A DNA stretch of 64,000 bases, taken from positions 16,182,001 to 16,246,000 of the forward strand of contig NC_086383.1 of assembly GCF_036588685.1 (NCBI RefSeq). The letters run 5' to 3'. The stretch comes from Mytilus trossulus. Its lineage: Eukaryota. The notes under the pieces are model-generated. The model ran no database searches, was not told where the DNA came from, and saw only the letters and a list, made by a program, of their open reading frames with translations. The translations under genes were made by a program, and so were the position numbers. Positions 1-63,769 of the stretch are shown here, one piece after another. The number at the start of each line of letters is the position of its first letter. The stretch's first letter is position 1.

Positions 1-554
1 TTGAGAACCAAATTCCAAAAAGTTTTGCCAAATACAGCTAAGGTAATCTATGCCGGAACTAAATGTTATGAACAATTGCATCCTATTTTTCTGCACAAAG
101 TATATTTTGTTATATCGAATTTTAATTTGATTCTGCTTTTATTGAATATTTTGTTTTGTTGACATTTTATTAAGGTTTTACGAGTTCGGTGATATTTTCC
201 AAAATTATTCCGTTTGTCGTAAAATTGAAAATCATTCTAACATAAAACTAATTTATTACGTGGTGGGTTGTAGATTTGTCGCCTTTTAACCTGCGCTGTG
301 ATGATTTGAAGATTGAAGAGTACGCAAATTCTGAAAATCTTATTGTCTAATTATCAATTGATTTCGATTTTTTTTATATTTTTTTTGATAAAAAAGTGGT
401 ATGAATGCCAGTGAGGTACATACCACATAGTCATTGAAGTATGAATATAAAACATATGAACACAAAGAGATTAAGAGAAAATGTTTCAACTAGATTAAGT
501 AACCATTCCATTTGGCAGCTTTGGTTAGAGGATATTTATTCAAACAATACTTAC

Positions 555-35003: not shown

Positions 35004-35064
35004 ATGAATGAAAGAATGTGGATTATCATAGTGGCCTTAGTTATAGATATAAAGTGTGCGAATG
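35004..35064 (+). CDS. Paralog A exon 1, signal peptide MNERMWIIIVALVIDIKCAN
   Basis: ATG, hydrophobic core, G|gtaagt phase 1; equivalent exon in paralog B. Confidence 0.8.
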
Positions 35065-36898
35065 GTAAGTTTTACTATCAATTCAATATGGGATCTGCCA
35101 AAATTGTCTTTTTATCAAATATATTACTCTGATCTTTATTTAAGCGGCTAAGAATAGAGACACAATAATTAGTAAAAACTCTTTAACCAAATACAGATTT
35201 ACAAAAGTGCTGCCTTCTTCAGTGAAAATTTCCATGCTAGAAATGAACAATACTTATTTAATTATAGGTATTATTTTCCTTGCTCACAAAAATGTCGTGA
35301 TATCACTATACTTTATACAAAGGTTCTTAACCTGTTCATCTTTTCATGTTTTAATTACTACGATTATTCTATCAAATTAATTTGAAGATTTACACCTGAT
35401 GTACTAAAATTAATTTCAATAAATACTCCAAAAAAACTCGTCCGATTAAGTTTTACTGAACAACTGATATAATTATAGTTTTTGACAAATAGCCGATCGA
35501 ACGTTTATTTCTTTTCCTGTAATTATTATTTATGCTGCTAAATGCTATACATTTCTGTAATACTACATTCCAGATCGCAAAAAAAATATGTCTAGCGTGT
35601 AGATGAAGAGATATACACATCTTTTAATTACGACTTGTGCTGAACAGCTGCTTTTATTTCAAACACTCACATGTTCATGTTTAGGATTACTCACTTATAC
35701 GTGTGTGCACTGATAAATATTGATGTAGTATGTTTGTTGTGTTTGATAACAGCGCCACCTGTAATAAATCACAAATAGCGAAATCTAATGATGAAATTCA
35801 TTGTATTGCAGCCACGGTATGTCAATGCTATATGTAATGCGCACACTGTTATATCATTCATCAAATAGTGCGTGCGTAATCTGTTATTACATTTACATAT
35901 AAATTTAAAATCATGAATAGAAATTGTTTGAAAGCCTAAGTGTTACCTTGTGAGGATTAATGATTATTACCGATAACTAAAATGATACAAAAACAGAATT
36001 AAGCTTCGGCACTTTACTGCGATTCATAAGGACATCAAACATGAATAACTCTAAATATGGTTGGTTGACCAATTATCTTTATATCTACGTGAGGTTTGGG
36101 GTTTATTTCGAACAAACAAGGCCTTTATAACATTTTACATCAGCAATAAATCAGAAAAAAAGGAATCTTAAAAAACTAGTATATTAGTAGGCGAACAATT
36201 TATTTTCAAGTACAAAATGTGTTCCCAGTATAATGAGAGACTTGTATAAAAGTAACACTATATCAGACAGTGAATGGCTTCTTTGCTTATTTGGCAATAT
36301 CTCTCTACATATAAATCTATTTTTGAATCTATTTTGAAAATGGCCCAATTAAACTGTATTACAAGCACTGACGGCCTACCCGGATTGCTATAAATACACC
36401 ACACAAAATGAATTCATCGATCAAATATGCAACTTCTTGTTCGATTGGATGCATGAAACGGAAGGCTGTTTTAGATAATATGATCAAACGGTTGAAAACT
36501 TTTTTTTCATTTGCTATAATCATTGATAATGTAAGGGTTACTCAAGTATATATTGTATTTCATAATTTTTATTTCATGGAGTTATTATTCAACCGTTACT
36601 TTTCTGCGTGATGATTAAATATATTTCTATTTTTTTTTCTTTTTTGGTTGTAAAAATCAGAACTTGTTTAATAATAATCATTGGAACAATCATATACCAG
36701 ATACCAACTTCATTTTAACAATTAGCAAACCTCCTACAGTATCATCAGCAATAAAAGGCACCGTTATTACAAAAAAAATATTTAAAAGACAGACACCAAA
36801 ATATTGACATAGTTCTCTCTTTATGTAAATTTTATCACTAAATGTCTTTCTTGATTCCGTGATGTTGGATTGCAGCCGATTTGACACAGTTTTTCCTT

Positions 36899-36930
<32 letters not shown>

Positions 36931-39900
36931 CTTTTTCCATTTATTAGAAAATGTTATAGCACTTTGAAACCTAGATATCGTTGTGTTAATGTAAACAGTT
37001 TGTACTTTTTTTTCTCAAGATAAAGATGTTTAAAATTTCATCATTAAATATTTATATTAATTCTTTAATGTATTGTTAATAAAATTGAGAAAGGAAATGG
37101 GGAATGTGTCAAAGCGACAAATCCGACCATAGACATGATAGAGCCGACAGCCACCAATGGGTCTTCAATGTAGCGAAAAACTCACACACCCGTAGGTTTC
37201 CTTCAGCTGGCCCCTTAAAAATATGTATACTAGTACAGTGATAATGGACGTCATACTAAACTCCGAATTATACACAAAAAACTAAAATAAAAAATCATAC
37301 AAGACTAACAAAGGCCAGAGGCTCCTGACTTGGGACAGGCGCAAAATTGCGGCGGGGTTAAACATGTTTATGAGAACTCAACCCTCCCCCTATACCTTTA
37401 ACCAATGTAGAAAAGTGAACGCATTACAATAACGAGTTTAGTATTTAATATTTTTCCATTTCTAAGCTTCGTATTTGTTTTTTAGTATGTGGATTTTATT
37501 TGAAAGGAGCAAAGACTGGCGTCCAGAATATGACCCAGCACACAGTAAATTGAATAATGTAAAAATGAGACAACTGTTCGGCTAAAGACGTCAAACGCTT
37601 TTTGTCATAAATTACCCGACAAATTTAACAAAAGATAGGGTATATCAAGGTAGCGACTGACGTCTGACTAATTAGATGAATGGGGTTGAATATTAAAATA
37701 CTACTTTTTGATAAATATTCCTGAAGTAATTAACATAGAGAAGTTAGTTTTTACTTTTTCCAGTATTATATATTTGTTCCACCCTAACCGTATTATATTG
37801 GCATAAAATGTTACATTTCATCGGACTCCTCACTTCCTAGTAAAATAAGCAGATGTGACAATAGATTAGACTACATGTAATATATCAATCTTGAAGGGGT
37901 ATTACAATGCTCCTATATTATTAAATCTAAAGCTTGTAAACTATGTCCAAATCGTGTTGATCCATTGAATTTTCTCAAAAGGGATTCTTGAAAGAACGTT
38001 GTCGATGATGTATAACTATAACCATCATTTAGAATGTATGATAAACACATTTCAAGAAAGACTTCAGTAAAACAAAATGCGTCACAAATGTAAATCGTCG
38101 CTTCTGAATGCTTGCAAAAGTATTCATCTTAATAACAATCCCCCAATAAATTATCTGCATAGAATATACTATATTTTAGTAAATATGTTAATAAAATATC
38201 AACAGACACATAGGTTTGTTTTTAATTTTTTTCTGACAATGCATACGTTAAAATTGTCGCAGTGTGACCGACATTCATTAAAACTGAATTGATAGAGTTG
38301 AACGGCATACGGGTACGTCAATAAGATAGCAACCCAAAAGGTCTCTTAGGTTAAATATGGTTTTGTAGAATATCACAGGTGACTATACAAGATAAAACTA
38401 GACTTTAACTAACTTAGCATTTAAACATCGGGATTTTTTATATCATCAACTATTGAAATAACACAGATCTGCAATTTATGGATATAGCAAATAGATTTCT
38501 ATATGTAAGGTAGTGCATCTAGGGACGTGTTCACATTGACATAAACTCACACATACACTAAACATAATTACGTTCCCATTGATAAAACTCAATGTTGACA
38601 TGTAGTTGAAATCATGTTTTGTCTACATGCAATCCATAGTCGATGTTAGCCTTGTGTAGATTAAGTGAACATAAAAAATGGGCATTCAGAACTTTCATTT
38701 TCCCACGTATATTTGAAAAAGAAACGATTTTTATATAAAATTGATACTTATAACACTTATTAATAAAGTTATTTACAGAAATATTTTTCTAAACTTGATA
38801 TATGTATTTGTTATAAAAACACTTTACTTAGCCTTATTAACCCCTTATCAAGACTCATCAATCATCATTGCCGAACACATAATTTATTTGAAAAAGTCTT
38901 CCCGAATCGACTGGACGTACACACTGACAGAAATATTTGCCACTGGTCTTTTCTCAATCAACGATTCACTCATAAATGTATTACTGAAAAAGGCTGAGGT
39001 GAATTGATTGTTTGTGCAGTACCGTAGATCCGTTAAAATACAATTAGAAATGAAAAAAAAACATTATCCCACTCTTTCCAAAAACTCCTTGGAGAAAAAA
39101 TACCATTTGAAACAAACAGTAGTGATCCTTAACATCGCAATTGATTTTCTTCGTCTATAAGCACACTGATGCAGCCTACGTTTTTAATGCGTAATCGAGA
39201 CATCCTTAAACTCCTGCAAATCCTTCCAAAATGACTTTCTTAAAGGAGCAGCCACTTTACTTTAAAAAAAGGGGGGTCTGAGTTCTGAGTTCTCGCGCGA
39301 AAGTTTATATTTAGTTTTTTTCGATGGTACCAATCCACTATTTAACACTATAATGTATGGGGAAACTTTGGATTCAGAATATTTGTTCATTCTAATCATT
39401 TGTGTGACCCGATTTTTTTTTATATTTAATCAAATTGTGGGAAAATCCATCCCCCTCTTTTTATTTTAAGTCAAATGGTCGTTCCCTAACTACTAGAAAA
39501 GTACAGTAGACATGTTTACAATTATTTTAATGTAATGTACACTGGTTTCACATTAAAGTTGTTCACATCTATACACATAGTTTATTACCTGTACATAAGA
39601 TTTGTTCACACTTGTAAACTATATGTCATTTAAATGTCCATTACGTAGAACCGAATGCAAACTTTTCTAGCAGTTAGGGAACGACCATTTGACTTCAAAA
39701 AGGGAGGGGAAGAGGGAATGGATTTTTCCTTGAAAAATATTCTGATCCCTAATTTGATAAAAACAAAATTCTGATCATACAGATGATTAAAAAAATTATT
39801 CTGAATTCAGAGCTTCCCCATACATTAAAGAGTTAAATATTGAAAAAAACAGTTGGTTGCTAGCATCGAAAAAACCTGAATAAAAACGTTCGCACGAAAA

Positions 39901-42900
39901 AAATCTCATTCAGACCCCCCCCCCTTTTTTTTTTGAAGTTATGAAGCTCTTTTATGAAAGCCATTTTGATGATTTGCAGTAGTTTAAAGATACTAAAGAT
40001 GCCTCAATTACGCATTCTGTTTGTTTCTTCTTCTATTGTTGTTTTTTTTTCTCCAAGGAGTATTTGGCAAGGAGGATGTTATGTGGTTTTTTTTTTATAT
40101 TTCTACGTGTATTTAACGGATCTGAGATACTAGACAAAGAAAACAATTTACCTCGCACTTTTTTTAGTAATGCTTTTATGAGTGAATCGTTGTTGGAGTA
40201 AAGACCAGTGGCAAATATTTCTGTGTACGTCCAGTCGATTCAAGAAGAACTTTTCAAATGAATTATTTGTTCGAAAATGATGATGCTTTGAGTCTTGATA
40301 AGGGGTTAATAAAGCTACGTTAAGTGTTTTTATAACAAATAGATATATCAAGTTTATACAAATATTTCTGTTAAGAACTTTATTGACAATTGTTATAAAT
40401 ATCAATTTTATTTAAATATCGTTTCTTCCTTAAATGTACATGGTAAAATTAATGTTCTAAATGCCTAGTTTAGTGTACACTTAACCTACACAAGGCCTAC
40501 ATTGACTATCGACTGAATGTAGACAAAACATGATTTAAACTATATCAATGGGAACGTATTATGTTTAGTTTATGTGTGAGTTACACGAACACAACACCGA
40601 GTTTAGTTCAATGAGAAGACGGCCTTATATTGTCTTTCATACATAGATAGGTTCATTTAGATTAGAGACCAAACTGCATTCAACAGCAACACACAGTGAG
40701 GTTTATTTTATGGAATTGTGTAAAATTGTTTAAATGAAAAGGTATATAATATTTGCTCTTCTATATTCAACCCTGAGAATGCTTTGACTACTATAAGATT
40801 TTAACCCTGTACGTGAAACAAGTACGGGGCATTGTATGCTACGTCATTGTAATGGATAAACTATCCTTACAATATAGTGTAACGCATACCGCTGACAGTT
40901 GTTGATTTTTTTTCTCGACCGAATGATGCCCTAATCAAAAGTATGGTCTGTTGACGTCCAGTATTTGTTTGTTATGCGTATTGCAATTCCTGATTTTGTC
41001 TGCTCCAATGAACCTCCCTCTCCAACCTGATTGCATTTAATTCCCTTTATGAAGACAGTTGAACTTTCAATAGAATACATTGAACAAAGTCAAGTCAGTA
41101 TTGAAATTAACTAAACTATTCAAAAATCAAAAATTAAAAAAAATTCTAAAACAATCAAATGAATTACATAGTGCCCATGCCGTATAAAATTAACTCTCCG
41201 AAATAAGTTGTTTGATACGGGTATACGTATGACAAGTATGTATATACCCGCTGGGTATACAGTATATTGACCATTTTTATGAAGTAATGTGGTTCAAAAA
41301 CTATTGTCATTGGAGATAGCTTTGAATGCATGAATGATTTCACAACTGACTTACAATAATCAAAAAGTTGTCAATTTGATCATTTATAAAAGTGTAAATA
41401 ATGTTACAGTTAAAGGTACATTTGTGATAACTAAGATTGCTGTGACGGTTGTGTCCTTTTTGTAACAATCTTCTAAATAGCCAACGGTAATTTTTTTTTA
41501 CAAATGTTCCAACCTATCCCGCACTGTAAGACATTTTGTATCAGTGACTTTTAAATCTGAATGACTATATCATTTTTTTTAAAGTTGCGACACTGAAGCT
41601 ATTACTATATAATAGTTGCAGCAAACAAATCTAAACCGTAACAAAGTTCGGCGTTGAAGCAGATTATTTATGACTGCTTCAAAGTTTTTGCGTTGGGAAA
41701 GTTTTTACATAAATGTTACAACTTTTCAAATGATTTCAACAGTCGCATTAAGACTCTGTGATAACATTTCCGGTGTTTAAAGACTAGTAGTTTATTTATG
41801 ACTGTTTCAACTATTTTATCGTTGTTGCAGTCGATTTGTGTGTAAGGTAATTTTTTAAAAAGTTGGAACAGTTTCAAAATAACTACAACAGTGACTTTTG
41901 ACAATTGTTTAAACTTTTACAAATATCATCAGTCGTAGAACGAATGTTACTGGCACATATGTATGGCAGTGATTTCTTCGTCCATTAGTGCATATATATC
42001 ATTAAAACGTTTAATCCCGCTGCAAATGTTTACACCTGTCCTAAATCAGGAATCTGATGTACATTAGTTGTCGTTTGTTTATGTAATTTATACGTGTTTC
42101 TCGTTTCTTGTTTTTTATATAGATTATACCGTTGGTTTTCCCGTTTGTATGGTTTTACACTAGTAATTTTGGGACCCTTTATAGCTTATTGTTCGGTGTG
42201 AGCCAAGGCTCCGTGTTGAAGGCCGTATATTGACCTATAATGGTTTACTTTTATGAATTGTTATTTGGAATGAGAGTTGTCTCATTTGCACTCACACCAC
42301 ATCTTCTCCCTATATCTATAAATGTATTGACTTTACAAATACATTGAAATATCGATATATATCTTTTAAACGAACCAATTTTAGTAAAAGTAAGGGTAAT
42401 TGATTCCAAAGGCAATGTATGTATTTGAATAGAAGAAATATCAAAATCAACAAATTGGTCACTATTTCCTAAAAAAGTAGAAAATAATATTAACAGTGTC
42501 TGTTGTTTGATTTGTTTTTCTTATATAAGTATCATTAAATGTATGGTTTATTCTAGCAAATAGTGTCCAATATGGTCAAGTATATCATACAGTACCTATG
42601 ACCTGGCAGGCTGCCTCTGATAAATGTGACACTAATAGATTAGAGTTTGAAGAAGATGTGCTGACAAATATTGACGTGCTGAAAGAAAAGGAATTTTGGC
42701 TTGGCATGGCCATTTACCGTGTATCTACACCTTGGATTGAAATTTTGGGTAGGTCGCTTTGGATCCAGAATTAACAAATCATGTTAAATTCAAAGATTAT
42801 TTACCGAGTTTCGTCAGAAACTGTAATTCATAACAGTACAAAATCAAGTCGCCTATTAAAGGTGTCTTCTGATTGTTGTTGTTTCATATACTCAAAATAA

Positions 42901-45900
42901 AAAAAAGTATCCTTAAGTTGTGAATAAAGTACTTGCCCAGTTTCGGCCATCTTGTTATTTGCCTATAATTTTGGACTCATTTTATTTAAAAAAATGCGAA
43001 ATCGATATCATTTTGAATTATTTATTTGAAGCAACAATCATAGATTGTTTATGTTGTAATGTTCGATTTTTTATGTTGTTCTCCTTTTTAAGTTCACTGT
43101 TTTTCATACAGGTTGCTTCGCAGTACCAGACAGATTAGATATTAAGAAAAGTCCTTCAATTGTGTTATGTCAGAAACAGTGTGAATCATATCAGTTCTTT
43201 GGTTACAGTGTAAGTATTGACTTTCTATTTTGAGTGTTCGTTTTTTTAAATAAAATTGTGAAACCTTTGTCATTGGCGTTGCACACACTTAATTATTCGT
43301 GTATTTTGTATTAAAATGCCGTATGATCTTTTATGACATACAGCCACCAATGTGTGAGGGAACTTTGGCATTACTTTTCATCTACTAGTTGTAAAAGAGT
43401 GGTGTGCTTTTATGTTCTAATGGTGAGTTTTTAAGTGGTGGTTGAGATTTGATTCTACTATTTAACCATTGTTCTTTAATTACGTGTTTGCTTTGTGGTT
43501 GTCTAATATATGAATCCCTATATTAGACATATATTAATGTCAAAAGACGGAAAATAAACCAGAATGAAATCGATTCATTTGAACACTCAGAAAATGCAAG
43601 ATTAATCGTCCCTAGCTTCCATCAACTTTTCTTTATCGTTTCAAATGTCTTTCTATGAGCATGATGTAAAACGTAGTTATATTGCTGATCAGTCCATCTT
43701 AATCTTGATTGATATACGAACAGTGAGTTTTCGTGGGGTTTGTGTTGCTTAATAAATTGTTTTTGTTTTTATTTAATGTGTCATATTCTGTTGTTTTGTC
43801 TAATTTTCTTTTCTTTTTTAGTCATGGCGTTGACAGTTTATTTTCGACTTATGAGTTTGTATATCCCTTTGTTATCATTCGCAATTTTTTCATCTTCTAG
43901 ACCTAACCTTATAATTGCTAGACCAATAATATGAAAGACAAGTTAAGGAATAGTATGTTTCAATTTAATCGATCGCAGTTAAATATATGTTGATATAAAC
44001 TCAGCATGAACAATTGTTTGTAAATCCTGAAGAACTATGTATAATGATATGCTTTATTTACAAAGTACATGCAAATAGATAACTCATATTTAATCACTTA
44101 AGTTTTTTCACTTTTTCGTCCTATAAGGTTTGTGAAGCTTTGTTGTATATTCGCTTTTTACAATGATATGTTCTCATTTCAGTTTTAAGACTGATCTTTC
44201 TTGTCCCGACTGGTATATATTTCATATTAAACAGTTTTATTTTCACTATGTATCTTTTATTCAACTTTGATTATAGCTTTCCATTTCAGAATTTATAGTT
44301 ATCTTAAATTTTTAAAATTTAATTGATTGTAATCTGAAAAGATATTTCTGGTTCCTATATAAAAACAATAATGTATTACCCTTATAGGAATCGACATCAA
44401 AGTGTTCTTGTCTACGAGATAAAGGTAGATCATACAGTATAAAGAATTGTATAGAACAAAATAATTCAAAATATTTCTTCGTTTATAAAGGTAAGAATAA
44501 TTTATTGTAAACTTCACTTATTACAAAATAAATCATTTAGATATAAAAGTGTTACATATAAATGTATGAAGGAAAATATTATATTATCTTTACTTTGCAC
44601 TTGAGTTCTACTTACAGTTGTGAAATATGATCCCAATTCGATAAATCCAGCCATATACTCGCATCATCCTTGATTTGTTGACCCATATGGTTTTATCTAC
44701 TGTTTTGTATTTTTTTTAATTAATTGCCTACACAGAAGATATGAAAACGGGAAATAAAGTTGCCAATGAGACCACAATTCAAAAGAAATCCAATCACGTA
44801 AATTTAAGCAGTGTAATCTAACAGTGTATGAGTATCTAGATGTTAGTTGTTCTTTAATTCATGATATTGCTTTAATGCATGTAAATTTTAACACATTTAG
44901 TATTCAGATCGAACGTTTCTGGCAACGACAATGATAAATGTACAACTCTATACTGTTCTGGTGGCAAATCTGAATTAACAGCAGTAAACTGTAATGAAAC
45001 AAGTTTTGGAACGAATAGTATATGTAGTAAGTGTTAATTTTTATGTAATATGTAATTGGATTACCTATATTGAATACATTTGAATGTGACAGTGTGTTTT
45101 TAACTTTTTTAAGCTATGTGTAGTGACCCCTTCAGATTAAATTGGTATTTCATTTTTTATTTATTTTGATGTGTTCCTTCCTGAGTATCAAAGTATTCTT
45201 TTCACTATAGATATACGATGATGTGGTACGAGTGCCAATGACAAAACTCTCCATCCGAGTCACAATTTGTAAAAGTAAACCATTATAGGTCAAAATTTGG
45301 TTATGAACACTGAGTAGTGGCTCACACCGAACCTCTATCTATAAAGGTCCCCAAAATGACTTGTGTCAAATAATTCAAACGGGAAAACTAGCTGCCTAAT
45401 TAATATGATTAATCCAACAAGAAACAGTTATGAACCACATCAACAATCGACAACTACTAAACATCAGATTTAGGACTCCGGACAGGTGAAAACAAATGCA
45501 TATTTTAGGCCACCATGAAAAAAGTTGAAAAATCTGTATTTAACGGCGATAACTGATATGAGGAGACAATTAATTTTATGATTTTAGCAATGTGACTTTT
45601 TCTATATATTTTTTTCTGGCTGATTATATCTCAACTGGTAATAATGAGTTTAGAGGATATATTTTTTTAGTGTAAAAAAAACGAAAAAAACCGGATGTTG
45701 TGAGATGGCAATTAATCACACTCGGCATTTAGGTAAGGTACACTTTAAAAACACCTGCATGAATTTACGTCTCAATCATATTCTTCTGAATACAGTATAT
45801 TCATTTATCAACAGTATGCTAAATCTGATTGTACCATATCTGAACCTAAATATAAACACTTAATAAATTATGTAAGTCTGAAGCAGCTTTTTTCTAGATA

Positions 45901-48900
45901 AACATTCATCGTTTATGTTCAGACCTTGACATTCGAAAGCCAGGGTGAGTTAATACGCTACAACTTTAAGAGCAATATGACTTAAAGAGGCTTAAACATT
46001 TTAGCAAAATTCAATTTAGGTCAATTTTGCCTTATGAGTTGGAAACGTATTTCTGGAATTGTGAGCCTGGCATTTTGTAAAACAATTATACACTCTCTAA
46101 CTGGTTACTACGGATGACCTTGAAGGCAAACAGTCCATAAACAGCAGCATTGAACTTGTAAATTCAATAAACACTTTTTACATTTTGTGCATATTTATCG
46201 CTTTTATGGATACATACCTTTTATTTATATCATGTTTCAAGACATCTGGTTTTTATTTCATGTTCCATCACTATTTTATTCATTTCTTTCAAGATAACGG
46301 GTCCGCAGCCGGTTGGGGTCTATCATATTCAGCTGCCAAACAAAGCTGCATGGGTATTTATCAGCTTTTACTTTCACCTGAAATTTACTGTCAATTAAAT
46401 GGTCATCAAAACCAAGCGGTGCCCATGTGGTCGAATGTTTTTCGAGCGGACACCGACGCTAAGCTGACACAAGGTAAATAGAGAAATACTAAAAGATATG
46501 TAAATTTTATGTAAACCAATTGGTTGTTTAAATTTATTTGATGTAGGTGAGATCACATTTCACACACTTGTGTCTGTTGTGACGAATTTTTCTTTTTTTT
46601 TAGATTTGTTTTCAACTCGTGTAAGTCGCGAAATAAATCACTTCTTTTTTTCGATTTTGGAATTTTTGGGATAAAGTTACCGGAAAAGTGCTGCATTATC
46701 GAGAATATTATCTACGATAAAGCTCTGACTCTACACATCTTTTGTAGGATTTTTTTCAAAACTTTCAGGAAAGCTTTCTATGTTTTAGCTCGCCCTCTTT
46801 AATAAGCTTGGTGGTTTTAAAATGTTGCAAAGCTGATATTTAACAATTGTAATATAAAACAGCAATCTTTATCTGACCTGTTACGATCTGCTTACCAATT
46901 CATATCAATAGTTATCTCTCCCATTGTTTCATGCGGATTGTATTATGAAGTCTTTTCTATTTTATGTGCTTATATATTTTTCTTATTCTTTTTTTTTGTC
47001 GTCTTTTTTTTTTGTTTTTGTCATGTTGTGGTTAGTTATTTTCCATCTGTGAGTTTTCATATTTCTTATTGTATCCTTCTCTTTTTCTTTGGACAGGAAT
47101 ATTTGTTTAGAACATGTGTAGATTATGCCATTGTATGGTATCGAGTTAATTGCGTCAGCCAATTAAAGGTTAAAAGTTTGAAGATTACAGATGTATCATT
47201 TGGGCTTTACAAGTGAATACAGACAATGCATTGTGTTTTTCATTACCAAATTTGAAAAGTTATCTTGGAAACAAAGCTTTCGTAGTAGCAACGGAACTCA
47301 TTTGTACAATGCGCTACATTCGTATGTAAAAACTTATATTGTAATACATATTCATAATTTGGAATACGTTTAAGGTACGTGTTTGAGGAGAGTGATCATT
47401 GGATTCTATGTAGGGAACGATTGCATCAACAAACAAAAAGAGACATATTATAGGAAACAGTAATTGCATTTACAAGTTTCTTTGATTTGTAATTAATCCA
47501 AACAGTATATGTAAAACCATTATACCATTTTCAGGCGAAGCGGGAAACAAAGAACCGCTTTACTGCCTAGCAGGCTCGTTTAAGGGGGAAAATGGCAAAA
47601 AAGAACTTGTTATAACCAGAAGATTTTGCAATAAGCAGTTAGACTATTTTGTGTGCAGAACAGGTATATAAATCACTTCTTAAATACATGCAGATCTTAC
47701 TTTTATATTAAGCGTAAGGCAACAATAATATACCGATGGTCATGAGTCATAAATCGATTTAAAACATATATTCAATCTATACTTGATTAAAAACACTTTT
47801 TGATTACACTTTGTAGAAAAATATATGCTAAACCACTAATTATATATATAAATCAGCTACAGCCGAGGTGTAATATCTATACGAGAATACTTTCATTTTT
47901 TTTCTGATAATAGTAGCATAGTCTTCATTTCCCCCTGTCCATATCGTAATAGTAACTTAGTGCATGACAACCTCTGTTAAAGCTAAGACACTTCTCATTA
48001 AATGTGATCGGAAAACCATATCAAGGTATTCTTTTTAAAAGTACCACACAGATCACTTCGTTTTAATGGTTTACAGTGTAGACGTTCAATTACATACACA
48101 TGCAAATATGGCATTTTTCTATTGAAATTAATTGTGCTCCATTATTGTTTAGGTACAGTTCATTCAGTAACTTCAAATGAAAGTTTAGTTGCTGTACCAA
48201 TTCCAGAGAAGATTTCAGGCACGACACATTCATCTCATGTTCAAGATAGCAAGCATGGTATCTATGATGTTAATTTTTACAAAAGTATCGTGTTTTGTTT
48301 GTTACTTGATCTTTTTAGAACGGGATGTTTTACCGATCCAATATGTATTTCTATTTGAATAATATTGGGTAAATAAAGTGTACCAGGCATAGTATGCAAA
48401 ATATATTATCAAACCGATATGACAACGATAGCATAACTTCATTTATTTTTCTGAGCACGTTAAAAAACACGGAATTCAAGTTTCATTTTAAAATTTTAAC
48501 TATAAATTGAACTCTCTTATGTCAACTATTTCGTATAAAAATCAAAAAAAATACTGTAAAGTCTTCGGTGTATTTGTTGATTGAATCAGTTTGATTTACA
48601 TTGTATCACTGATTTTGATTTTTCTTGACAATATTGTCAATGCTTTTCATCGTTTACCATGTTTACGAAAAAACACAATATAAGTTGAATATTTAGTCGA
48701 TTTATAAATAGAGTCATTCTAATTGGCTTATAGAGTGTTCACACATAAAAAGTGTTGATATTATTGTAAAATCGGTAAGATTTTGTGAAATGATTTTAAA
48801 ATAGATCTTCAGATTTGTTAACAAACTTCGTCTTATTTAACCGCCGGTTGAGTTTACCTAATCACAATATTTTCAAAGAGAACTTTTAGCAGTCTACTGA

Positions 48901-51582
48901 TCTTTGAAGATGTTATGCTATTTTTGTATCAAATTTAATTTCAACAAACGCATATAAACACATTGTTTGTAATTGAACCATTAAATGTTAAAAACTGCAA
49001 ATGGAAGAAAATTTCAGTCTAACTATTACCTTGTTATTTGTATATGGAAACAAATAATGCAACTGACTAAAAATAAGAATTATGAACTTTCCCTATGAAA
49101 CATCAACTATTTATAACTCCTGAATCAATTTATAATGGGTTGAGTTCAGGATTTAGTATTTTGTTTTAAACAAAAATTGGCGAACGACGTTCCTGAAATA
49201 GTCTTCTTCTATAATATTTCCCCCGATTTTCAACATCTTTCAATCCAAAAAAAATAATGATCTGTAATAGAACAGTCTTTCAAAATTTTAAGTGATTGAC
49301 AATAGACACAAATTCAAGAAATCTCGTAATTAGGAAACACAAGCAATCGTGAGTACTATTTTTTTATCCGCATTTTACAATTTCTTTTATGTATTTCCAA
49401 TTTTTCAGATGAAAATAGAAGAGCTCTAAATGAAAGGCAGCTATTTATATTTAACAAGTTCAACATTAAAAATCATATTAACACAGCACTATGTGAAACA
49501 AATGTTAAAAACCCTAAAATGTGCAAATATTTTTATGAACGCATTATTTTAAACAAACTAAAGCATGCAGTAAATATCTTATAGTTGCATATACAGTTAT
49601 TGCATTGAATAACAATGTATTCGCTATTTTCTTAAGGTGCAGCCACTTCTACTACTCAAAACCAAATCATAATTGCAACACAGGAAATGAAGGAAGATTC
49701 AAGCGGTAGTTTTAATATAGGTACATGGATTTTTTAAAACTGAGTTTTTATCAGCTTCTAAGCATGATTGTGTCCTTCAACGTTTTGAAGAAAATGTATA
49801 CATGTTATAACAGAAAAACGACAAACGAAGGGCTAACCAAACTCATTAGTCGAACACGAGATGACAATGTCATTGCAAAAAGAAAGGCACTTGTGCACAA
49901 AACATAGAATAAAACAATGAATGCCGAGCAAAACCCATCAAAATCAGTTGCTATATACAAAAAGTACGATTGGTAAACTATCTTTACGTGCTTATTACAG
50001 TTGATCAGCTATAGTACTCAGGTTTTATTTGCAACTCAACGAACGAAACTTCATTTTTACAAATAATCATTGAGCATTACTTATTACTATAATAGAAAAA
50101 CAAACTGTATCAACCCCTCTCAGAAGTGAGACTTGTATTCCTTATCCTTTATAAGGCAATGTGCTATGATTGTCAATAGGACAAAGTTTATATGAACACT
50201 AAGTCTTTTTCTTCTAAATGTTGTTTTTGTATCGAATAAAAGTTGAATATATATTATTCACATCTGTATCATATGTGTTGTCTGTATTTATTAGATCCTG
50301 TCATTGGTGGCATTGTAGCTGCGGTAATACTTATAACTGTTTTGCTTGTGGTGATTTCATGCAAAATAAGGTCAGAATAAATGTGTGCTCTGTGATAGAA
50401 AGTGTTTTAATTTTCGTGTGCAATTTGTATCACACCATAAATCGAAATTTTATAGTGAGAAATACATCCATTTTTGTTTTACTTCACCGCTATGATAATT
50501 ATCACGGAATTAGCTTGCATGTTTGTCTATCATATACATTTTTACTATCGACCTGCACCATTTTTTTGAACCGCTGTGGATTGGAGTACTGGTCGGGAAT
50601 ACATTTATAAAAAGATTTCTGAAATGACCGGAGTTTACTTTTTACATAATATTTTAAGAGTTGATGAACACTGTAGCAGTTCAATTTAAACCTTTCCTTG
50701 AAGAAATTGTCAGAGTTTCTTGATCTTTTGTACAAAGACTCTTGTGGAATTCGTCAATACTTGGGGCATAGATCGTACTTTTTCCTTAGTCAGTGTATAA
50801 GTTAGTCATACATTTATAATGCGTACGCTTTTTAATGTTTATTATACTTAATTCCAATGTATGTTACCATTTACTTAAAAGTACATACAAAGAGCTAGGA
50901 TACATCATGTACCCTTGTATCTTGTGTTCAAGTCTCTAGGGTTTTTATTCCTAAAAATTAAAATTCCAAACAATAACGCAGCTCGGGAAGTACAATTTGG
51001 AATTTCCTACTTTTCCTATTTATCTCTGATATATTAAGTATCTCTAAGACACTTTTTGCAAAGATATAAACAGATTTAAATGATGTTTTCAGTTCATGTG
51101 GATTTTTCAAAACGACTAGTATGGATAAACAAGAAGTCTCATTTTCAACAGCAGTTAGTGAACATTCACAAAATTCAGAAGTGCGAACAAGTGAGATAAC
51201 GACCTCTAACGAATCATATGGCTTATCTCCAAACAACTCAACCAACGTGTATGCAGTCGTAAACAAAATTAAAAAGAACGAAATCCAAACAACCGAGGAC
51301 ACTTATATTGAGACATCATTCGGAGAATATGATCGATTAAACGGGGTATCGAAACGGAGAACAGATGCAAAGGAAAATTTATATAACAGTCATGCAGGTA
51401 TTCGTAACGAAAATGACCCAACATACGACAGTTCCAACCATGGAGGAAGAACACTCCAATTTGATAACGATGTGTATGATCATACAGACACATTATTAAC
51501 GGACGGTAGTGACTACGGTTATTCGTCGACACTCAAATCAGAAGCTAGAAATGAAAATGATATATACGATAAGGCTGTCTAG
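35004..51582 (+). CDS. 547-aa type I transmembrane protein: CTL-like domain with nested WSC-like module, second CTL-like domain, S/T stalk, TM, multi-tyrosine tail (paralog A, 11 coding exons)
   Basis: Exons 35004-35064, 42557-42748, 43112-43209, 44388-44490, 44901-45026, 46294-46473, 47535-47663, 48153-48257, 49637-49720, 50295-50370 and 51093-51582. All introns are GT-AG with compatible phases. Total 1644 nt open frame, ending in TAG. Confidence 0.88.
38521..40625. repeat. ~2.1-kb foldback: two ~970-bp inverted arms with a ~160-bp spacer, in intron 1 of paralog A
   Basis: Arm 38521-39502 is the diverged reverse complement of 39661-40625. The ORF track shows mirrored translations at 38741(+) and 40405(-). 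Confidence 0.9.
42557..42748 (+). CDS. Paralog A exon 2 (N-half of CTL-like domain: MTWQAASDKC...FWLG...WIEILG)
   Basis: ttctag acceptor, gtaggt donor, 192 nt; same size and about 48% aa identity to 62858-63049. Confidence 0.92.
43112..43209 (+). CDS. Paralog A exon 3 (WSC-like: GCF...LCQKQCESYQFFGYS)
   Basis: atacag acceptor, gtaagt donor, 98 nt; about 69% aa identity to 63646-63743. Confidence 0.92.
44388..44490 (+). CDS. Paralog A exon 4 (WSC-like second half: ESTSKCSC...NC...FFVYK)
   Basis: cttatag acceptor, AAG|gtaaga donor; phase 0-1 fits both neighbours. Confidence 0.88.
44901..45026 (+). CDS. Paralog A exon 5 (C-half of CTL-like domain: DKCTTLYC...VNC...SIC)
   Basis: tttag acceptor, gtaagt donor, 126 nt, phase 1-1. 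Confidence 0.85.
46294..46473 (+). CDS. Paralog A exon 6 (second CTL-like domain, N-half)
   Basis: tttctttcaag acceptor, CAAG|gtaaat donor; LSYSAAKQSC...MWSNVFR. Confidence 0.9.
47535..47663 (+). CDS. Paralog A exon 7 (second CTL-like domain, C-half: YCLAG...FCNKQLDYFVC)
   Basis: ttttcag acceptor, CAG|gtatat donor, 129 nt. Confidence 0.9.
48153..48257 (+). CDS. Paralog A exon 8 (Ser/Thr stalk)
   Basis: gtttag acceptor, G|gtatct donor, 105 nt, phase 1-1. Confidence 0.75.
49637..49720 (+). CDS. Paralog A exon 9 (Ser/Thr stalk)
   Basis: ttttcttaag acceptor, TAG|gtacat donor, 84 nt, phase 1-1. Confidence 0.75.
50295..50370 (+). CDS. Paralog A exon 10 (transmembrane helix VIGGIVAAVILITVLLVVI)
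   Basis: ttattag acceptor, AAG|gtcaga donor, phase 1-2. Confidence 0.9.
51093..51582 (+). CDS. Paralog A exon 11 (cytoplasmic tail with 10 Tyr, stop)
   Basis: gttttcag acceptor in frame with ORF 51121-51582. Confidence 0.92.
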
Positions 51583-62443: not shown

Positions 62444-62857
62444 GTAAGTGACGAAAAAAGTAGTTGTACATCAAATCTTTCAAAAACTACTTTGTAAAAG
62501 AAATATCTGATGGAATTTGTTATGCCCGTCAGGATTTAGGATTAAGGTGAACTAGTGAAAAAAAGAATTTAATTTGTATTTTGAAAACATGTTAGATAAA
62601 AACATTCATTAACTAAATTGTACCGACGGGATTTGTCTATAATACTTTAACATGTTATATTCTAGTTTTTGTTTTCCTAATTACGAAAACTCACAGATAG
62701 ATACAAATAAAAGTATATCAAAGCATAGACTGAGATTATATATATATACATATGAACATTAATTTCTGATTTAATTAAAACAAATTTGTGTAATGATATC
62801 GTAATTTCTAATTTTAATAGATTTATATATTTATATATATATATACATTTCTTTCAG

Positions 62858-63049
62858 CATACAGTTTTCCAATTGATCAGGCATTTTACACAGACAGTAA
62901 TACTTGGAAAGTTGCTTCTGAAATATGTGGTAATGGTGGATTAGAGTATAACGAAATGGTGTTGAAAAATATTCCATTGCAGCGAGAGAAAAAGTTTTGG
63001 CTTGGAAAAGCTATGTATCGTTTAACTTCATCTTGGATTGAAATTCTAG
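62858..63049 (+). CDS. Paralog B exon 2 (CTL-like N-half)
   Basis: tttctttcag acceptor, TAG|gtacat donor, 192 nt; NTWKVASEIC...FWLGKAMYR...WIEILG. Confidence 0.92.
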
Positions 63050-63645
63050 GTACATAAAATGGGAAATGTAGTTAGTAAAAATATAGTAATACCTTTATAA
63101 AGAAGTTTAGGAAGCCAAACTCTTACTTTCAAATATTCCAAAAATTGCGTTTATTAATAAAACAATATGATTACCATATATAGGTTTTCAGCTATCAAAT
63201 GGCCATTTACCTTTCCTGGTCAACGGGAACATTAATTGCCCCTTTTATTAAAACGAATTCGTGTAATGATATCGTAATTTCTACTTCCAATAAATTTTGA
63301 TACTTGAAATCTGAAACCTTGTATAATTCTATTCAGACCAAATCGGATGGTATTATTGATTCATTATTATTCGTTTGATACCATTTTTTGTGGATTTCGT
63401 GGGTATCGGTAAGGAGGTAATGCATAATTCGACATACCCTCGAGGTTAATTATCCACAAACTGTAAATTTTCTTTAATGCACGATAATTGGTACCAAAGA
63501 AAATAGATAAATTTACTGTATGCATTATTGTGTTGAATCTTCAGATATTGTAAAATAGTTTGGTTTTTGGATGGTTGTTTTGTTGACGTTTATCATAAAA
63601 TTATATGTGATTGTGACGATGTTAAGTTCTATGTGTTTAAAACAG

Positions 63646-63743
63646 GTTGCTATTCAGTGCCAGACGGTCAGATAAGTAAGAAAAGATCTTCAATCGTTTT
63701 GTGCCAAAAACAATGTAAATCATATCAGTTCTTTGGTTACTGT
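63646..63743 (+). CDS. Paralog B exon 3 (WSC-like); gene continues past the window end
   Basis: aacag acceptor, gtaagt donor, 98 nt; GCYSVPDG...LCQKQCKSYQFFGYC. Confidence 0.92.
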
Positions 63744-63769
63744 GTAAGTATTTGATTTATTTAAACAAA

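What the first reader, a model, noticed from the sequence alone, without database searches (positions are those of the whole stretch)
42557..47663. Domain-in-domain ectodomain: a WSC-like module apparently inserted into the long loop of a C-type-lectin-like domain
Seen in the sequence: exon 2 encodes the first half of a CTLD-like fold (TWxxAxxxC ... FWLG, the 'WIGL' strand) and exon 5 encodes the missing second half (C...C...xxC). Between them, exons 3+4 encode a WSC-like pattern (GCF..LCxxxC..YxFFG..CxC..C..VY). Exons 6+7 form a second, uninterrupted CTL-like domain. No EPN/QPD/WND Ca2+-sugar motifs are present. Established: the CTLD long-loop region after WIGL is the variable ligand-binding part, and WSC domains bind glycans such as beta-glucan. 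Inference: a glycan-binding module replaces the canonical lectin loop, giving an unusual pattern-recognition architecture that standard HMMs may miss because the CTLD is split.
Basis: partly seen in the sequence, partly recalled or inferred. Interest (0 to 1): 0.85.

Follow-up and report, generated by a model that had tools for sequence, protein, structure and literature searches.

The report
Mussel lectin receptor with nested domains

Summary
Six GT-AG exons (42557-47663, + strand) give an open 275-aa ectodomain inside an 11-exon, 547-aa type I membrane protein. Spliced contigs in three public runs show all five introns. The family is found only in Mytilus, and the genome is probably M. trossulus. 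Pfam sees no domain in any of 31 members.

Structure predictions of the two closest database homologues support both folds:
- WSC/PAN-like insert: yeast Wsc1 and KREMEN1 are the top Foldseek matches. It has six of the eight WSC cysteines at WSC spacing, and the same phase-0 intron as canonical mussel WSC domains.

In two AlphaFold models and the ESM Atlas model, exon 2 packs with exon 7, not exon 5. Exons 5+6 form a separate compact CTLD/Link-like unit. So one CTLD appears to host two nested modules at its long-loop position. Cysteine counts fit this (4+6+6). All of this rests on predicted structures of homologues; the joined window protein was not folded. Ligand and function are unknown.

First readers noted the same idea on three other pieces of this genome (unchecked).

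Verdict: partly supported, a new variant of a known kind, moderate interest.

The parts
35004..35064 (+). Exon 1: start codon and signal peptide (aa 1-21)
   Evidence: tblastn of P0002/P0042 N-termini; ATG and GT donor; completes the open 547-aa model
42557..42748 (+). Exon 2: N-terminal half of the outer CTLD (beta1, alpha1 with Cys44, alpha2, the FWLG 'WIGL' strand); aa ~21-85
   Evidence: Open frame and splice sites; spliced contigs; CTLD matches start here in both homologue models
43112..43209 (+). Exon 3: first half of the WSC-like module (Cys86, Cys104-x3-Cys108); aa ~85-117
   Evidence: Joints 42748/43112 and 43209/44388 in run X2. Best conserved exon (84% identity to P0002; dN 0.16). 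Ends at a phase-0 intron in the same place as canonical mussel WSC exons
44388..44490 (+). Exon 4: second half of the WSC-like module (Cys123-x-Cys125, Cys138, FVYK end); aa 118-152
   Evidence: Spliced contigs. Wsc1 and KREMEN1 are the top Foldseek matches of the homologue models. A local WSC HMM places its best domain on this region
44901..45026 (+).
   Evidence: Spliced contigs. Aligns as one unit with the exon-6 segment in the ESM Atlas model. Not part of the CTLD match in the P0030 model
46294..46473 (+). Exon 6: helix plus hairpin segment (Cys212, Cys226; WSNVFR strand); the second part of the inner unit; aa ~194-254
   Evidence: Spliced contigs in X1-X3; Atlas part searches
47535..47663 (+). 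Exon 7: C-terminal half of the outer CTLD (beta3 Cys264, Cys285, beta5 Cys294); aa ~254-297
   Evidence: Spliced contigs. All CTLD alignments end here. The fragment test places it against the exon-2 fragment (weak support)
48153..48257 (+). Exon 8: Ser/Thr-rich stalk
   Evidence: tblastn to P0002/P0042; GT-AG borders and open model; pLDDT below 50 in the homologue model
49637..49720 (+). Exon 9: stalk
   Evidence: tblastn; open model
50295..50370 (+). Exon 10: transmembrane helix
   Evidence: Hydrophobic stretch VIGGIVAAVILITVLLVVI; helix 360-382 in the P0002 model
51093..51582 (+). Exon 11: cytoplasmic tail of about 160 aa with 10 tyrosines (YAVV, YIET, GEYDRL, YDSS, YDHT, IYDKAV end) and the stop codon
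   Evidence: 67-78% identical to homologue tails; motif list; motifs conserved in both subfamilies

Best explanation
The gene encodes a Mytilus-specific type I membrane receptor of 547 aa. It has a signal peptide, a compact cysteine-rich ectodomain (aa ~22-297), a Ser/Thr stalk, one transmembrane helix and a tyrosine-rich tail.

The ectodomain is best read as one C-type-lectin-like domain whose two halves lie far apart in the sequence. Exon 2 supplies beta1-alpha1-alpha2-beta2. Exon 7 supplies beta3-beta4-beta5. The canonical long-loop (Ca2+/sugar) region is replaced by about 170 residues that hold two nested modules:
- a truncated WSC/PAN-like module (exons 3+4);
- a second compact CTLD/Link-like unit (exons 5+6).

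Shown: the exons, their splicing and transcription, the restriction to Mytilus, the cysteine pattern, and the absence of EPN/QPD/WND.

Predicted on homologues 59-84% identical per exon: the folds and which segments pack together.

Inferred: the CTLD acts as a scaffold that presents the WSC-like and inner modules where a lectin normally binds its ligand. A glycan or protein ligand is then sensed and reported through phosphorylation of the tail tyrosines, including a conserved GEYDxL-type YxxL motif. The phase-1 symmetric exons let modules be added, lost or swapped among paralogues.
For: Gene and expression:
- Open spliced frame.
- All five introns are present as GT..AG joints in contigs of three runs.
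- Two paralogues on the same contig (the tandem neighbour and one at 27.08 Mb) share the exon order, with dN/dS about 0.38.

CTLD:
- P0002 model: pLDDT 76-95 over residues 27-298.
- The model range is always about 24..297. For example, E-selectin 1-120 aligns onto 26..297.
- Foldseek, which needs contiguous matches, finds no significant CTLD in either model. That is expected for a split domain.

Inner unit:
- ESM Atlas model of P0002: residues 153-256 align as one body to Lectin_C/Xlink clusters (TM 0.59-0.75, 80-101 aligned).
- Residues 195-297 align only as separate halves, TM <=0.41.

Cysteines conserved family-wide: 1 (E2) + 3 (E7) = 4; 6 in the WSC module; 4 (E5) + 2 (E6) = 6. The counts are even for the nested pairing and 5+5 for the tandem pairing.

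Fragment test (E2, E5 and E7 pieces of P0002, partner E7): weak support, score 0.49 against a best control of 0.01.
- The score falls to 0.01 when the E2 piece is replaced.
- The mark was reached by 51 of 78 solved complexes and 2 of 108 mismatches. At 0.60 or under it was reached by only 5 of those 78, and by all 4 mismatches that passed.
- The runs agree in >=80% of contacts; partner pLDDT >=63.

WSC:
- Foldseek's top hit for the P0030 model is yeast Wsc1 7pz2_B (E 7.7e-3, prob 1.00, TM 0.52). KREMEN1 5fws aligns at rmsd 3.0 over 98 columns.
- The Cys spacing C..C-x3-C..C-x-C..C equals C1-C6 of KREMEN1, whose disulfides are C1-C6, C2-C4 and C3-C5 (PMC5014086).
- A phase-0 intron lies three residues after the conserved Gly, as in canonical WSC exons of this genome.
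- UniRef names P0047 'WSC domain-containing' and P0002, P0004, P0043, P0045 and P0050 'C-type lectin domain-containing'.
Against: - No structure of the window's own protein was predicted. The joined model has no reference and was left out. Everything structural comes from homologues and from shallow alignments of 31 rows.
- Coordinates of the models were not available. The pairing is deduced from the first and last aligned residues, from trimming, and from part searches.
- The linear order N-half, C-half, N-half, C-half is what a simple tandem duplication gives. Predictors can swap homologous halves.
- Internal duplication is not detectable by sequence (hhalign and shuffle tests).
- The inner unit is confident in one model only (P0002), not in P0030.
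- Pfam WSC and Lectin_C do not match. The local WSC HMM is weak (domain E 8e-4 to above 1).
- Some gene models have exon 5 without exons 6/7 (P0024, P0048, P0020) or exons 6+7 alone (P0044). That fits tandem domains if those models are complete.
- No ligand, tissue or signalling data exist.
Confidence: 0.6

Rival explanations
1. One reading: two tandem CTLD-like domains. Domain 1 is exon 2 + exon 5 with only the WSC-like module (exons 3+4) in its long loop. Domain 2 is an uninterrupted compact CTLD made of exons 6+7. One extra disulfide links the two domains.
For: - The linear order of the halves is what tandem duplication produces.
- Exon 6 has a TW..A...C-like start and exon 7 a C...C...C end.
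- Gene models exist with exons 2-5 only (P0020, P0024, P0048) or exons 6-7 only (P0044).
- A WSC-less model, P0004, joins exon 2 directly to exon 5.
- Exon 5 and exon 7 share an LYC..G...EL...CN motif. The C1/C2 shuffle z is 3.5 in P0002 only.
Against: - Both AlphaFold models place the CTLD match from the exon-2 to the exon-7 segment.
- A contiguous exon 6+7 CTLD should have been an easy Foldseek hit, but none reached E<0.1.
- In the Atlas model, exons 6+7 align only half by half, while exons 5+6 align together.
- Cysteine counts would be 5+5, which needs an inter-domain bond.
- The truncated gene models are mostly unreviewed 'unnamed protein product' or partial entries.
Confidence: 0.27
2. 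There is no true domain-in-domain. The ectodomain is a string of small, independent cysteine-rich modules. The CTLD and WSC resemblances are generic beta-hairpin and disulfide patterns that the predictors over-interpret.
For: - No Pfam or PDB sequence match.
- No Foldseek hit below E 1e-3.
- Shallow alignments.
Against: - The result is reproduced in a 31%-identical subfamily.
- WIGL-type and alpha1-Cys motifs are present.
- WSC-specific cysteine spacing and a shared intron position and phase.
- UniRef names based on other profile methods.
Confidence: 0.1
3. The locus is a decaying or untranslated member of a fast-evolving family, so the architecture has no present function.
For: - The family has many truncated gene models.
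- The introns are full of high-copy repeats.
- No run on record as RNA holds the stretch.
Against: - All 11 exons are open with canonical splice sites.
- Spliced contigs carry the exact joints in three runs.
- dN/dS of about 0.38 against two paralogues.
- All 16 ectodomain cysteines are kept.
Confidence: 0.03

Closest known systems
C-type lectin-like domain superfamily, NK-receptor-like or compact CTLDs without a Ca2+ site (best structural matches: tetranectin 1htn, LLT1 4qkg, NKp80 8qmd, MBP-C 1bv4)
   Different: The two halves are about 170 residues apart. The long-loop region is replaced by whole domains. There is no EPN/QPD/WND. The Pfam Lectin_C model does not match. The protein is type I, whereas NK-type CTLD receptors are type II (the last point from my own knowledge).
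WSC domain (Pfam PF01822; KREMEN1 5fws, yeast Wsc1 7pz2), a PAN/Apple-like fold
   Same: It is the top Foldseek match. It has the GC start, the C-x3-C on the helix, the C-x-C on the strand and a sixth Cys, which match the KREMEN1 pairs C1-C6, C2-C4 and C3-C5 (PMC5014086). It has the same phase-0 intron as canonical mussel WSC domains.
   Different: It lacks the C7-C8 disulfide and the CGG motif, which PMC9024836 calls specific to Wsc-like domains. It is about 67 aa rather than about 82-95. It falls below Pfam detection. It is nested in another domain rather than free-standing.
Polycystin-1 / PKD-REJ type proteins, which carry a WSC domain and a CTLD in one ectodomain (from my own knowledge; PMC10140915 lists polycystic kidney disease protein orthologues among CTLD proteins)
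   Same: WSC and CTLD modules are combined on a membrane protein.
   Different: There the domains lie side by side in a very large multi-pass protein. Here the WSC-like module is inside the CTLD of a small single-pass receptor. No sequence similarity was found.
Bivalve-specific CTLD-containing proteins with extra domains (Saco et al. 2023, PMC10140915)
   Same: That survey reports bivalve-unique, uncharacterised architectures that combine CTLD with WSC, with a putative immune role. This family fits that class.
   Different: The survey lists domains found by HMMs. It does not describe a split CTLD or a nested arrangement in the passages read. This family escapes Pfam altogether.
hemITAM-bearing C-type lectin receptors such as Dectin-1 and CLEC-2 (from my own knowledge)
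   Same: A CTLD receptor without a Ca2+ sugar site whose own tail carries an acidic YxxL motif (GEYDRL here).
   Different: Opposite membrane topology. The tail has about ten tyrosines. There is no evidence of Syk-type signalling. The resemblance is a lead only.

Membership tests
C-type lectin-like domain (CTLD) superfamily | Double-loop alpha/beta fold (beta1-alpha1-alpha2-beta2 ... beta3-beta4-beta5) | tested here: met
C-type lectin-like domain (CTLD) superfamily | Four conserved cysteines (alpha1-beta5 and beta3-loop) and a WIGL-type motif | tested here: met
   Cys44 in MTWQAASDKC, and EFWLG, in exon 2. Cys264, Cys285 and Cys294 in exon 7. All are conserved in 8-9 of 9 full-length members. 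Disulfide connectivity itself cannot be tested here.
C-type lectin-like domain (CTLD) superfamily | Match to the curated sequence model (Pfam Lectin_C PF00059) | tested here: not met
   No hit at E<=10 for the exons or for any of 31 members. UniRef still names several members 'C-type lectin domain-containing'.
Ca2+-dependent carbohydrate-recognition domain (true C-type lectin) | EPN/QPD motif plus WND in the long loop and beta4 | tested here: not met
   None of EPN, QPD, WND, EPS, QPN or EPD occurs in the 547-aa model. The long loop is replaced by the insert.
WSC domain (PF01822) | PAN/Apple-like fold, beta1-beta5-beta3-beta4-beta2 sheet on one helix | tested here: met
   Foldseek on the P0030 model: Wsc1 7pz2_B at E 7.7e-3, prob 1.00, TM 0.52; KREMEN1 5fws at prob 0.84, rmsd 3.0 over 98 columns. 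On the P0002 model: Wsc1 at prob 0.91, plus HGF and plasminogen PAN domains. The strength is moderate; no E value falls below 1e-3.
WSC domain (PF01822) | Eight cysteines, including the WSC-specific C1-C6 and C7-C8 pairs and the CGG motif (PMC9024836) | tested here: not met
   Six Cys are conserved (C86, C104, C108, C123, C125, C138), matching C1-C6 in spacing. C7, C8 and CGG are absent from exons 3+4.
WSC domain (PF01822) | Match to the curated or a local sequence model | tested here: inconclusive
   No hmmscan hit. The locus is not among the 150 scored six-frame matches in its own genome. An HMM built from 9 canonical WSC exons of this genome puts its best domain on the insert in nearly every member, but with domain E from 8e-4 to above 1. 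hhalign gives P 0.0028 over 32 columns.
WSC domain (PF01822) | Gene structure shared with canonical WSC domains of the same genome | tested here: met
   Canonical copies split as ...YAGVE | YGFECFCG at a phase-0 intron. This gene splits as ...FFGYS | ESTSKCSC, also phase 0, three residues after the conserved Gly.
Domain-in-domain (nested) architecture | The host domain's two sequence-distant parts pack into one fold around the insert | tested here: met
   CTLD alignments span model residues about 24-297 (P0002) and 22-318 (P0030, with 168-256 trimmed) using only about 90 residues. The fragment test gives weak support: 0.49 against a best control of 0.01. These are predicted models only.

The most novel reading that the evidence does not exclude
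One CTLD has lost its ligand-binding long loop and instead hosts two whole modules: a truncated WSC domain and a second CTLD/Link-like unit. The second unit is built from what look like the C-half and then the N-half of a duplicated CTLD. That would make it a segment-swapped or circularly permuted arrangement created by internal exon duplication with a four-residue linker. Phase-1 exons would then let mussels add, drop or exchange these modules among paralogous tyrosine-tailed receptors.
Probability: 0.4. Interest if true: 0.7.

Novelty: new variant of a known kind. Interest (0 to 1): 0.55.

Why it matters
Bivalves rely on very large, fast-changing sets of lectin-type receptors, and most of them are uncharacterised. 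This family shows a route to new recognition surfaces that domain catalogues miss. The CTLD is used as a scaffold, and complete modules are spliced into the place where the sugar-binding loop normally sits. Because the host domain is split, Pfam reports no domain at all, so surveys that count HMM hits will overlook these genes. If the nested and swapped topology is real, it is a clean natural example of domain insertion combined with half-domain swapping through symmetric-phase exons. It would also give a defined target (ectodomain about 275 aa, 16 Cys) for structural and glycan-binding work on mussel immunity.

Tried and rejected
- Pfam on each exon, on 10 homologues and on all 31 alignment rows: only noise.
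- Family profile against PDB sequences: only transmembrane and low-complexity noise.
- hhalign of exon-2 against exon-6 columns, and of exon-5 against exon-7 columns: no signal. Pairwise shuffle tests gave mean z of about 0. An internal duplication is therefore not shown by sequence.
- RNA evidence: no run on record as RNA holds the stretch. The three small-share runs nevertheless gave spliced contigs. Contigs cannot give expression level or strand.
- A tblastn hit suggested that the neighbouring paralogue encodes the whole WSC module in one exon. Translation showed stops; its exon 3 ends at the same GT as here. This was rejected, so no contiguous WSC reference was available to fold alone.
- Model coordinates are not exposed. 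Contacts, PAE and disulfides could not be read. Whether it is a circular permutant stays open. The Atlas alignments to small CTLD/Xlink-like clusters are sequential and end at residue ~245.
- Pfam WSC six-frame search of the genome: 150 scored matches, none at this locus.
- Coarse dN/dS per exon shows no positive selection (0.12-0.73).
- The joined 547-aa or 275-aa sequence was built only inside local scripts, to check frame, length and cysteine numbering.

Full report
WHAT IS THERE. The window is AT-rich animal DNA, about 31% GC. It is G000 contig C11, 16,182,001-16,246,000, in a 1.3-Gb genome. A family member from Mytilus trossulus sits on a contig of exactly C11's length, 71,253,669 bases. 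Earlier notes of this scan name the same species. The genome is therefore probably M. trossulus.

The six exons of the finding have GT..AG borders and read as one open 275-aa frame:
- 42557-42748
- 43112-43209
- 44388-44490
- 44901-45026
- 46294-46473
- 47535-47663

Adding exon 1 (35004-64), two stalk exons, a transmembrane exon and a tail exon gives an 11-exon, 547-aa type I membrane protein. Introns flank exon 2, exons 3+4 as a pair, exon 5, exon 6 and exon 7 in phase 1. The intron inside the WSC-like module is phase 0.

TRANSCRIPTION. No run on record as RNA holds the stretch. When the three small-share runs were laid on it, however, contigs 93-99% identical carried all five predicted joints with GT..AG ends. 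Record 6 of X2 covers exons 2-3-4. Record 5 of X1 and record 16 of X3 cover exons 4-5-6-7. Intron-less contigs can only come from spliced RNA, so the exon model is confirmed in close relatives or other individuals.

Two paralogues on the same contig, the tandem neighbour starting at window 62851 and one at 27.08 Mb, keep all six exons in the same order. Three further copies at 27.0-27.06 Mb match for only some exons. The two full copies are open, with dN/dS about 0.38.

FAMILY. A full HMMER pass of exon 2 over 1.84 billion representatives found only 37 proteins. Word-indexed searches with two full-length members found 12 and 10. Every named hit is from Mytilus (coruscus, californianus, edulis, galloprovincialis, trossulus). 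The window's own protein is not among them. The nearest is P0002 (M. coruscus, 532 aa), 59-84% identical exon by exon. Pfam finds no Lectin_C or WSC in any exon or in any of 31 aligned members, and a family profile finds no PDB relative. UniRef, using other methods, names several members 'C-type lectin domain-containing' and one (P0047) 'WSC domain-containing'.

STRUCTURE. I folded the two natural homologues that carry the same exon set.

P0002, folded with alignment A1, gave pLDDT 76-95 across residues 27-298. P0030, from a subfamily only 31% identical and folded with A2, gave confident exon-2, WSC and exon-7 segments. Its exon-5/6 segment (168-256) was below pLDDT 50.

WHICH HALVES PAIR. Every CTLD alignment starts at the first strand of the exon-2 segment (model residue about 22-27). 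Every one ends at the last strand of the exon-7 segment (about 296-301 in P0002, 310-318 in P0030). E-selectin, whose chain begins directly with beta1, aligns residues 1-120 onto 26..297.

In P0030 the stretch between is trimmed for low confidence. The aligned residues can therefore only be exon 2 plus exon 7.

Foldseek needs near-contiguous matches. It found no CTLD below E 0.1 in either model. That would be odd if exons 6+7 formed an ordinary uninterrupted CTLD.

The ESM Atlas holds its own model of P0002. Its part 153-256 (exons 5+6) aligns as one body to Lectin_C and Xlink clusters (TM 0.59-0.75, 80-101 residues). Its part 195-297 (exons 6+7) aligns only as 195-245 or as 246-297 (TM <=0.41).

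Conserved cysteines number 1, 6, 4, 2 and 3 in exons 2, 3+4, 5, 6 and 7. That is 4 and 6 for the nested pairing, and 5 and 5 for the tandem pairing.

A fragment test used the exon-2, exon-5 and exon-7 pieces of P0002, with exon 7 as the partner. It gave weak support: score 0.49 against a best control of 0.01.
- The score fell to 0.01 when the exon-2 piece was replaced.
- The mark was reached by 51 of 78 solved complexes and 2 of 108 mismatches. At 0.60 or under it was reached by only 5 of those 78, and by all 4 mismatches that passed.
- The runs agree in >=80% of contacts, and partner pLDDT is >=63.

Together these favour one outer CTLD (exon 2 ... exon 7) whose long-loop position holds exons 3-6.

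THE INSERT. Foldseek's best match for the P0030 model is the yeast Wsc1 sensor domain (E 7.7e-3, prob 1.00, TM 0.52). KREMEN1, plasminogen, HGF and plant S-receptor-kinase PAN domains follow. The P0002 model gives the same set more weakly. WSC is a PAN/Apple-type fold (PMC5014086, PMC9024836).

The six conserved cysteines (86, 104, 108, 123, 125, 138 in the window protein) have the spacing of KREMEN1 C1-C6. The KREMEN1 pairs are C1-C6, C2-C4 and C3-C5. The C1-C6 bond ties the two ends of the module together, which suits insertion into a loop. The WSC-specific C7-C8 pair and the CGG motif are missing, so this is a truncated, divergent WSC.

This genome has at least 150 six-frame WSC matches, many split into two exons. 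In canonical copies the split is a phase-0 intron three residues after the conserved Gly (...YAGVE | YGFEC...). This gene splits at ...FFGYS | ESTSKC..., also phase 0. An HMM from nine canonical WSC exons of this genome puts its best domain on the insert in nearly all members, but only weakly.

WHAT REMAINS OPEN.
- The fold and topology of the exon 5+6 unit rest on one AlphaFold model and the Atlas model.
- By motif, exon 5 looks like a CTLD C-half and exon 6 like an N-half. That suggests a swapped or permuted copy, but sequence tests do not show a duplication.
- Several database gene models lack cassettes. P0004 lacks exons 3+4 and P0043 lacks exons 5+6; both stay in frame and keep even cysteine numbers. 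Others lack exons 6/7. Most of these are unreviewed, so they do not decide the topology.

FUNCTION (inference). There is no EPN/QPD/WND, so classical Ca2+-dependent sugar binding by the CTLD is unlikely. The CTLD probably serves as a scaffold that displays the WSC-like module and the inner unit.

The tail has ten tyrosines, mostly after acidic residues. Its motifs are conserved in both subfamilies: YAVVN/YSVVN, GEYDxL, NxYxSH, TYDS and a terminal IYDK. This points to phosphotyrosine signalling.

Tandem paralogues, fast divergence and restriction to one genus fit a lineage-specific recognition receptor, perhaps an immune one. Bivalve-unique CTLD+WSC proteins of unknown function have been catalogued (PMC10140915), but the passages read there describe no nested layout.

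VERDICT. This is a new variant of a known kind, of moderate interest, and it depends on predicted structures of homologues.

Noticed in passing
window 62851-63744 and on to G000:C11:16,250,385: A tandem paralogue starts inside the window (exon 2 at about 62851-63051, exon 3 at 63646-63744). It continues beyond the window end with the same exon order, stalk, transmembrane helix and tyrosine tail. It is 38-71% identical per exon to this gene.
   Followed up: partly
window 43754-43924, 45122-45463, 46832-47173: These intron stretches have summed contig depths in the hundreds to thousands in all three runs, with many partial matches and loose ends. They are high-copy repeats or transposon fragments, some apparently transcribed.
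   Followed up: no
database proteins P0004, P0043, P0014, P0045 (Mytilus coruscus / edulis / Logan): These gene models lack whole cassettes: no exons 3+4; no exons 5+6; no exon 6. All the skipped blocks are phase-1 symmetric, so exon skipping or shuffling would stay in frame. Whether they are real isoforms or genes, or annotation gaps, is unknown.
   Followed up: partly
G000:C3:28.0-29.0 Mb (loci L012-L038): A large cluster of canonical WSC-domain exons, many nearly identical. Each domain is split at the same phase-0 intron. This looks like a tandemly repeated multi-WSC gene family.
   Followed up: no
window 43121-43210 joined to 46361 in run X1 (record 2, 1437 nt): A contig with 15 mismatches in 90 bases joins an exon-3-like piece to the middle of exon 6 ('between: not known'). 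It is probably a transcript of a paralogue with a different layout, or an assembly chimera.
   Followed up: no
window 51093-51582: The cytoplasmic tail has 10 tyrosines. GEYDRL resembles a hemITAM-type acidic YxxL. The C-terminal IYDKAV is conserved as IYDK(A/S)(V/T) in both subfamilies.
   Followed up: partly
protein P0001 (ENA, 1038 aa): This was the best-scoring hit of the exon-2 search (E 6e-25), through 15 repeats matching query residues 12-40. It also hits 14 unrelated Pfam families. It looks like a repetitive or low-complexity artefact, not a relative.
   Followed up: no
window 35065-42556: Intron 1 is about 7.5 kb. It separates the signal-peptide exon from the ectodomain exons and holds repeat-like sequence.
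   Followed up: no
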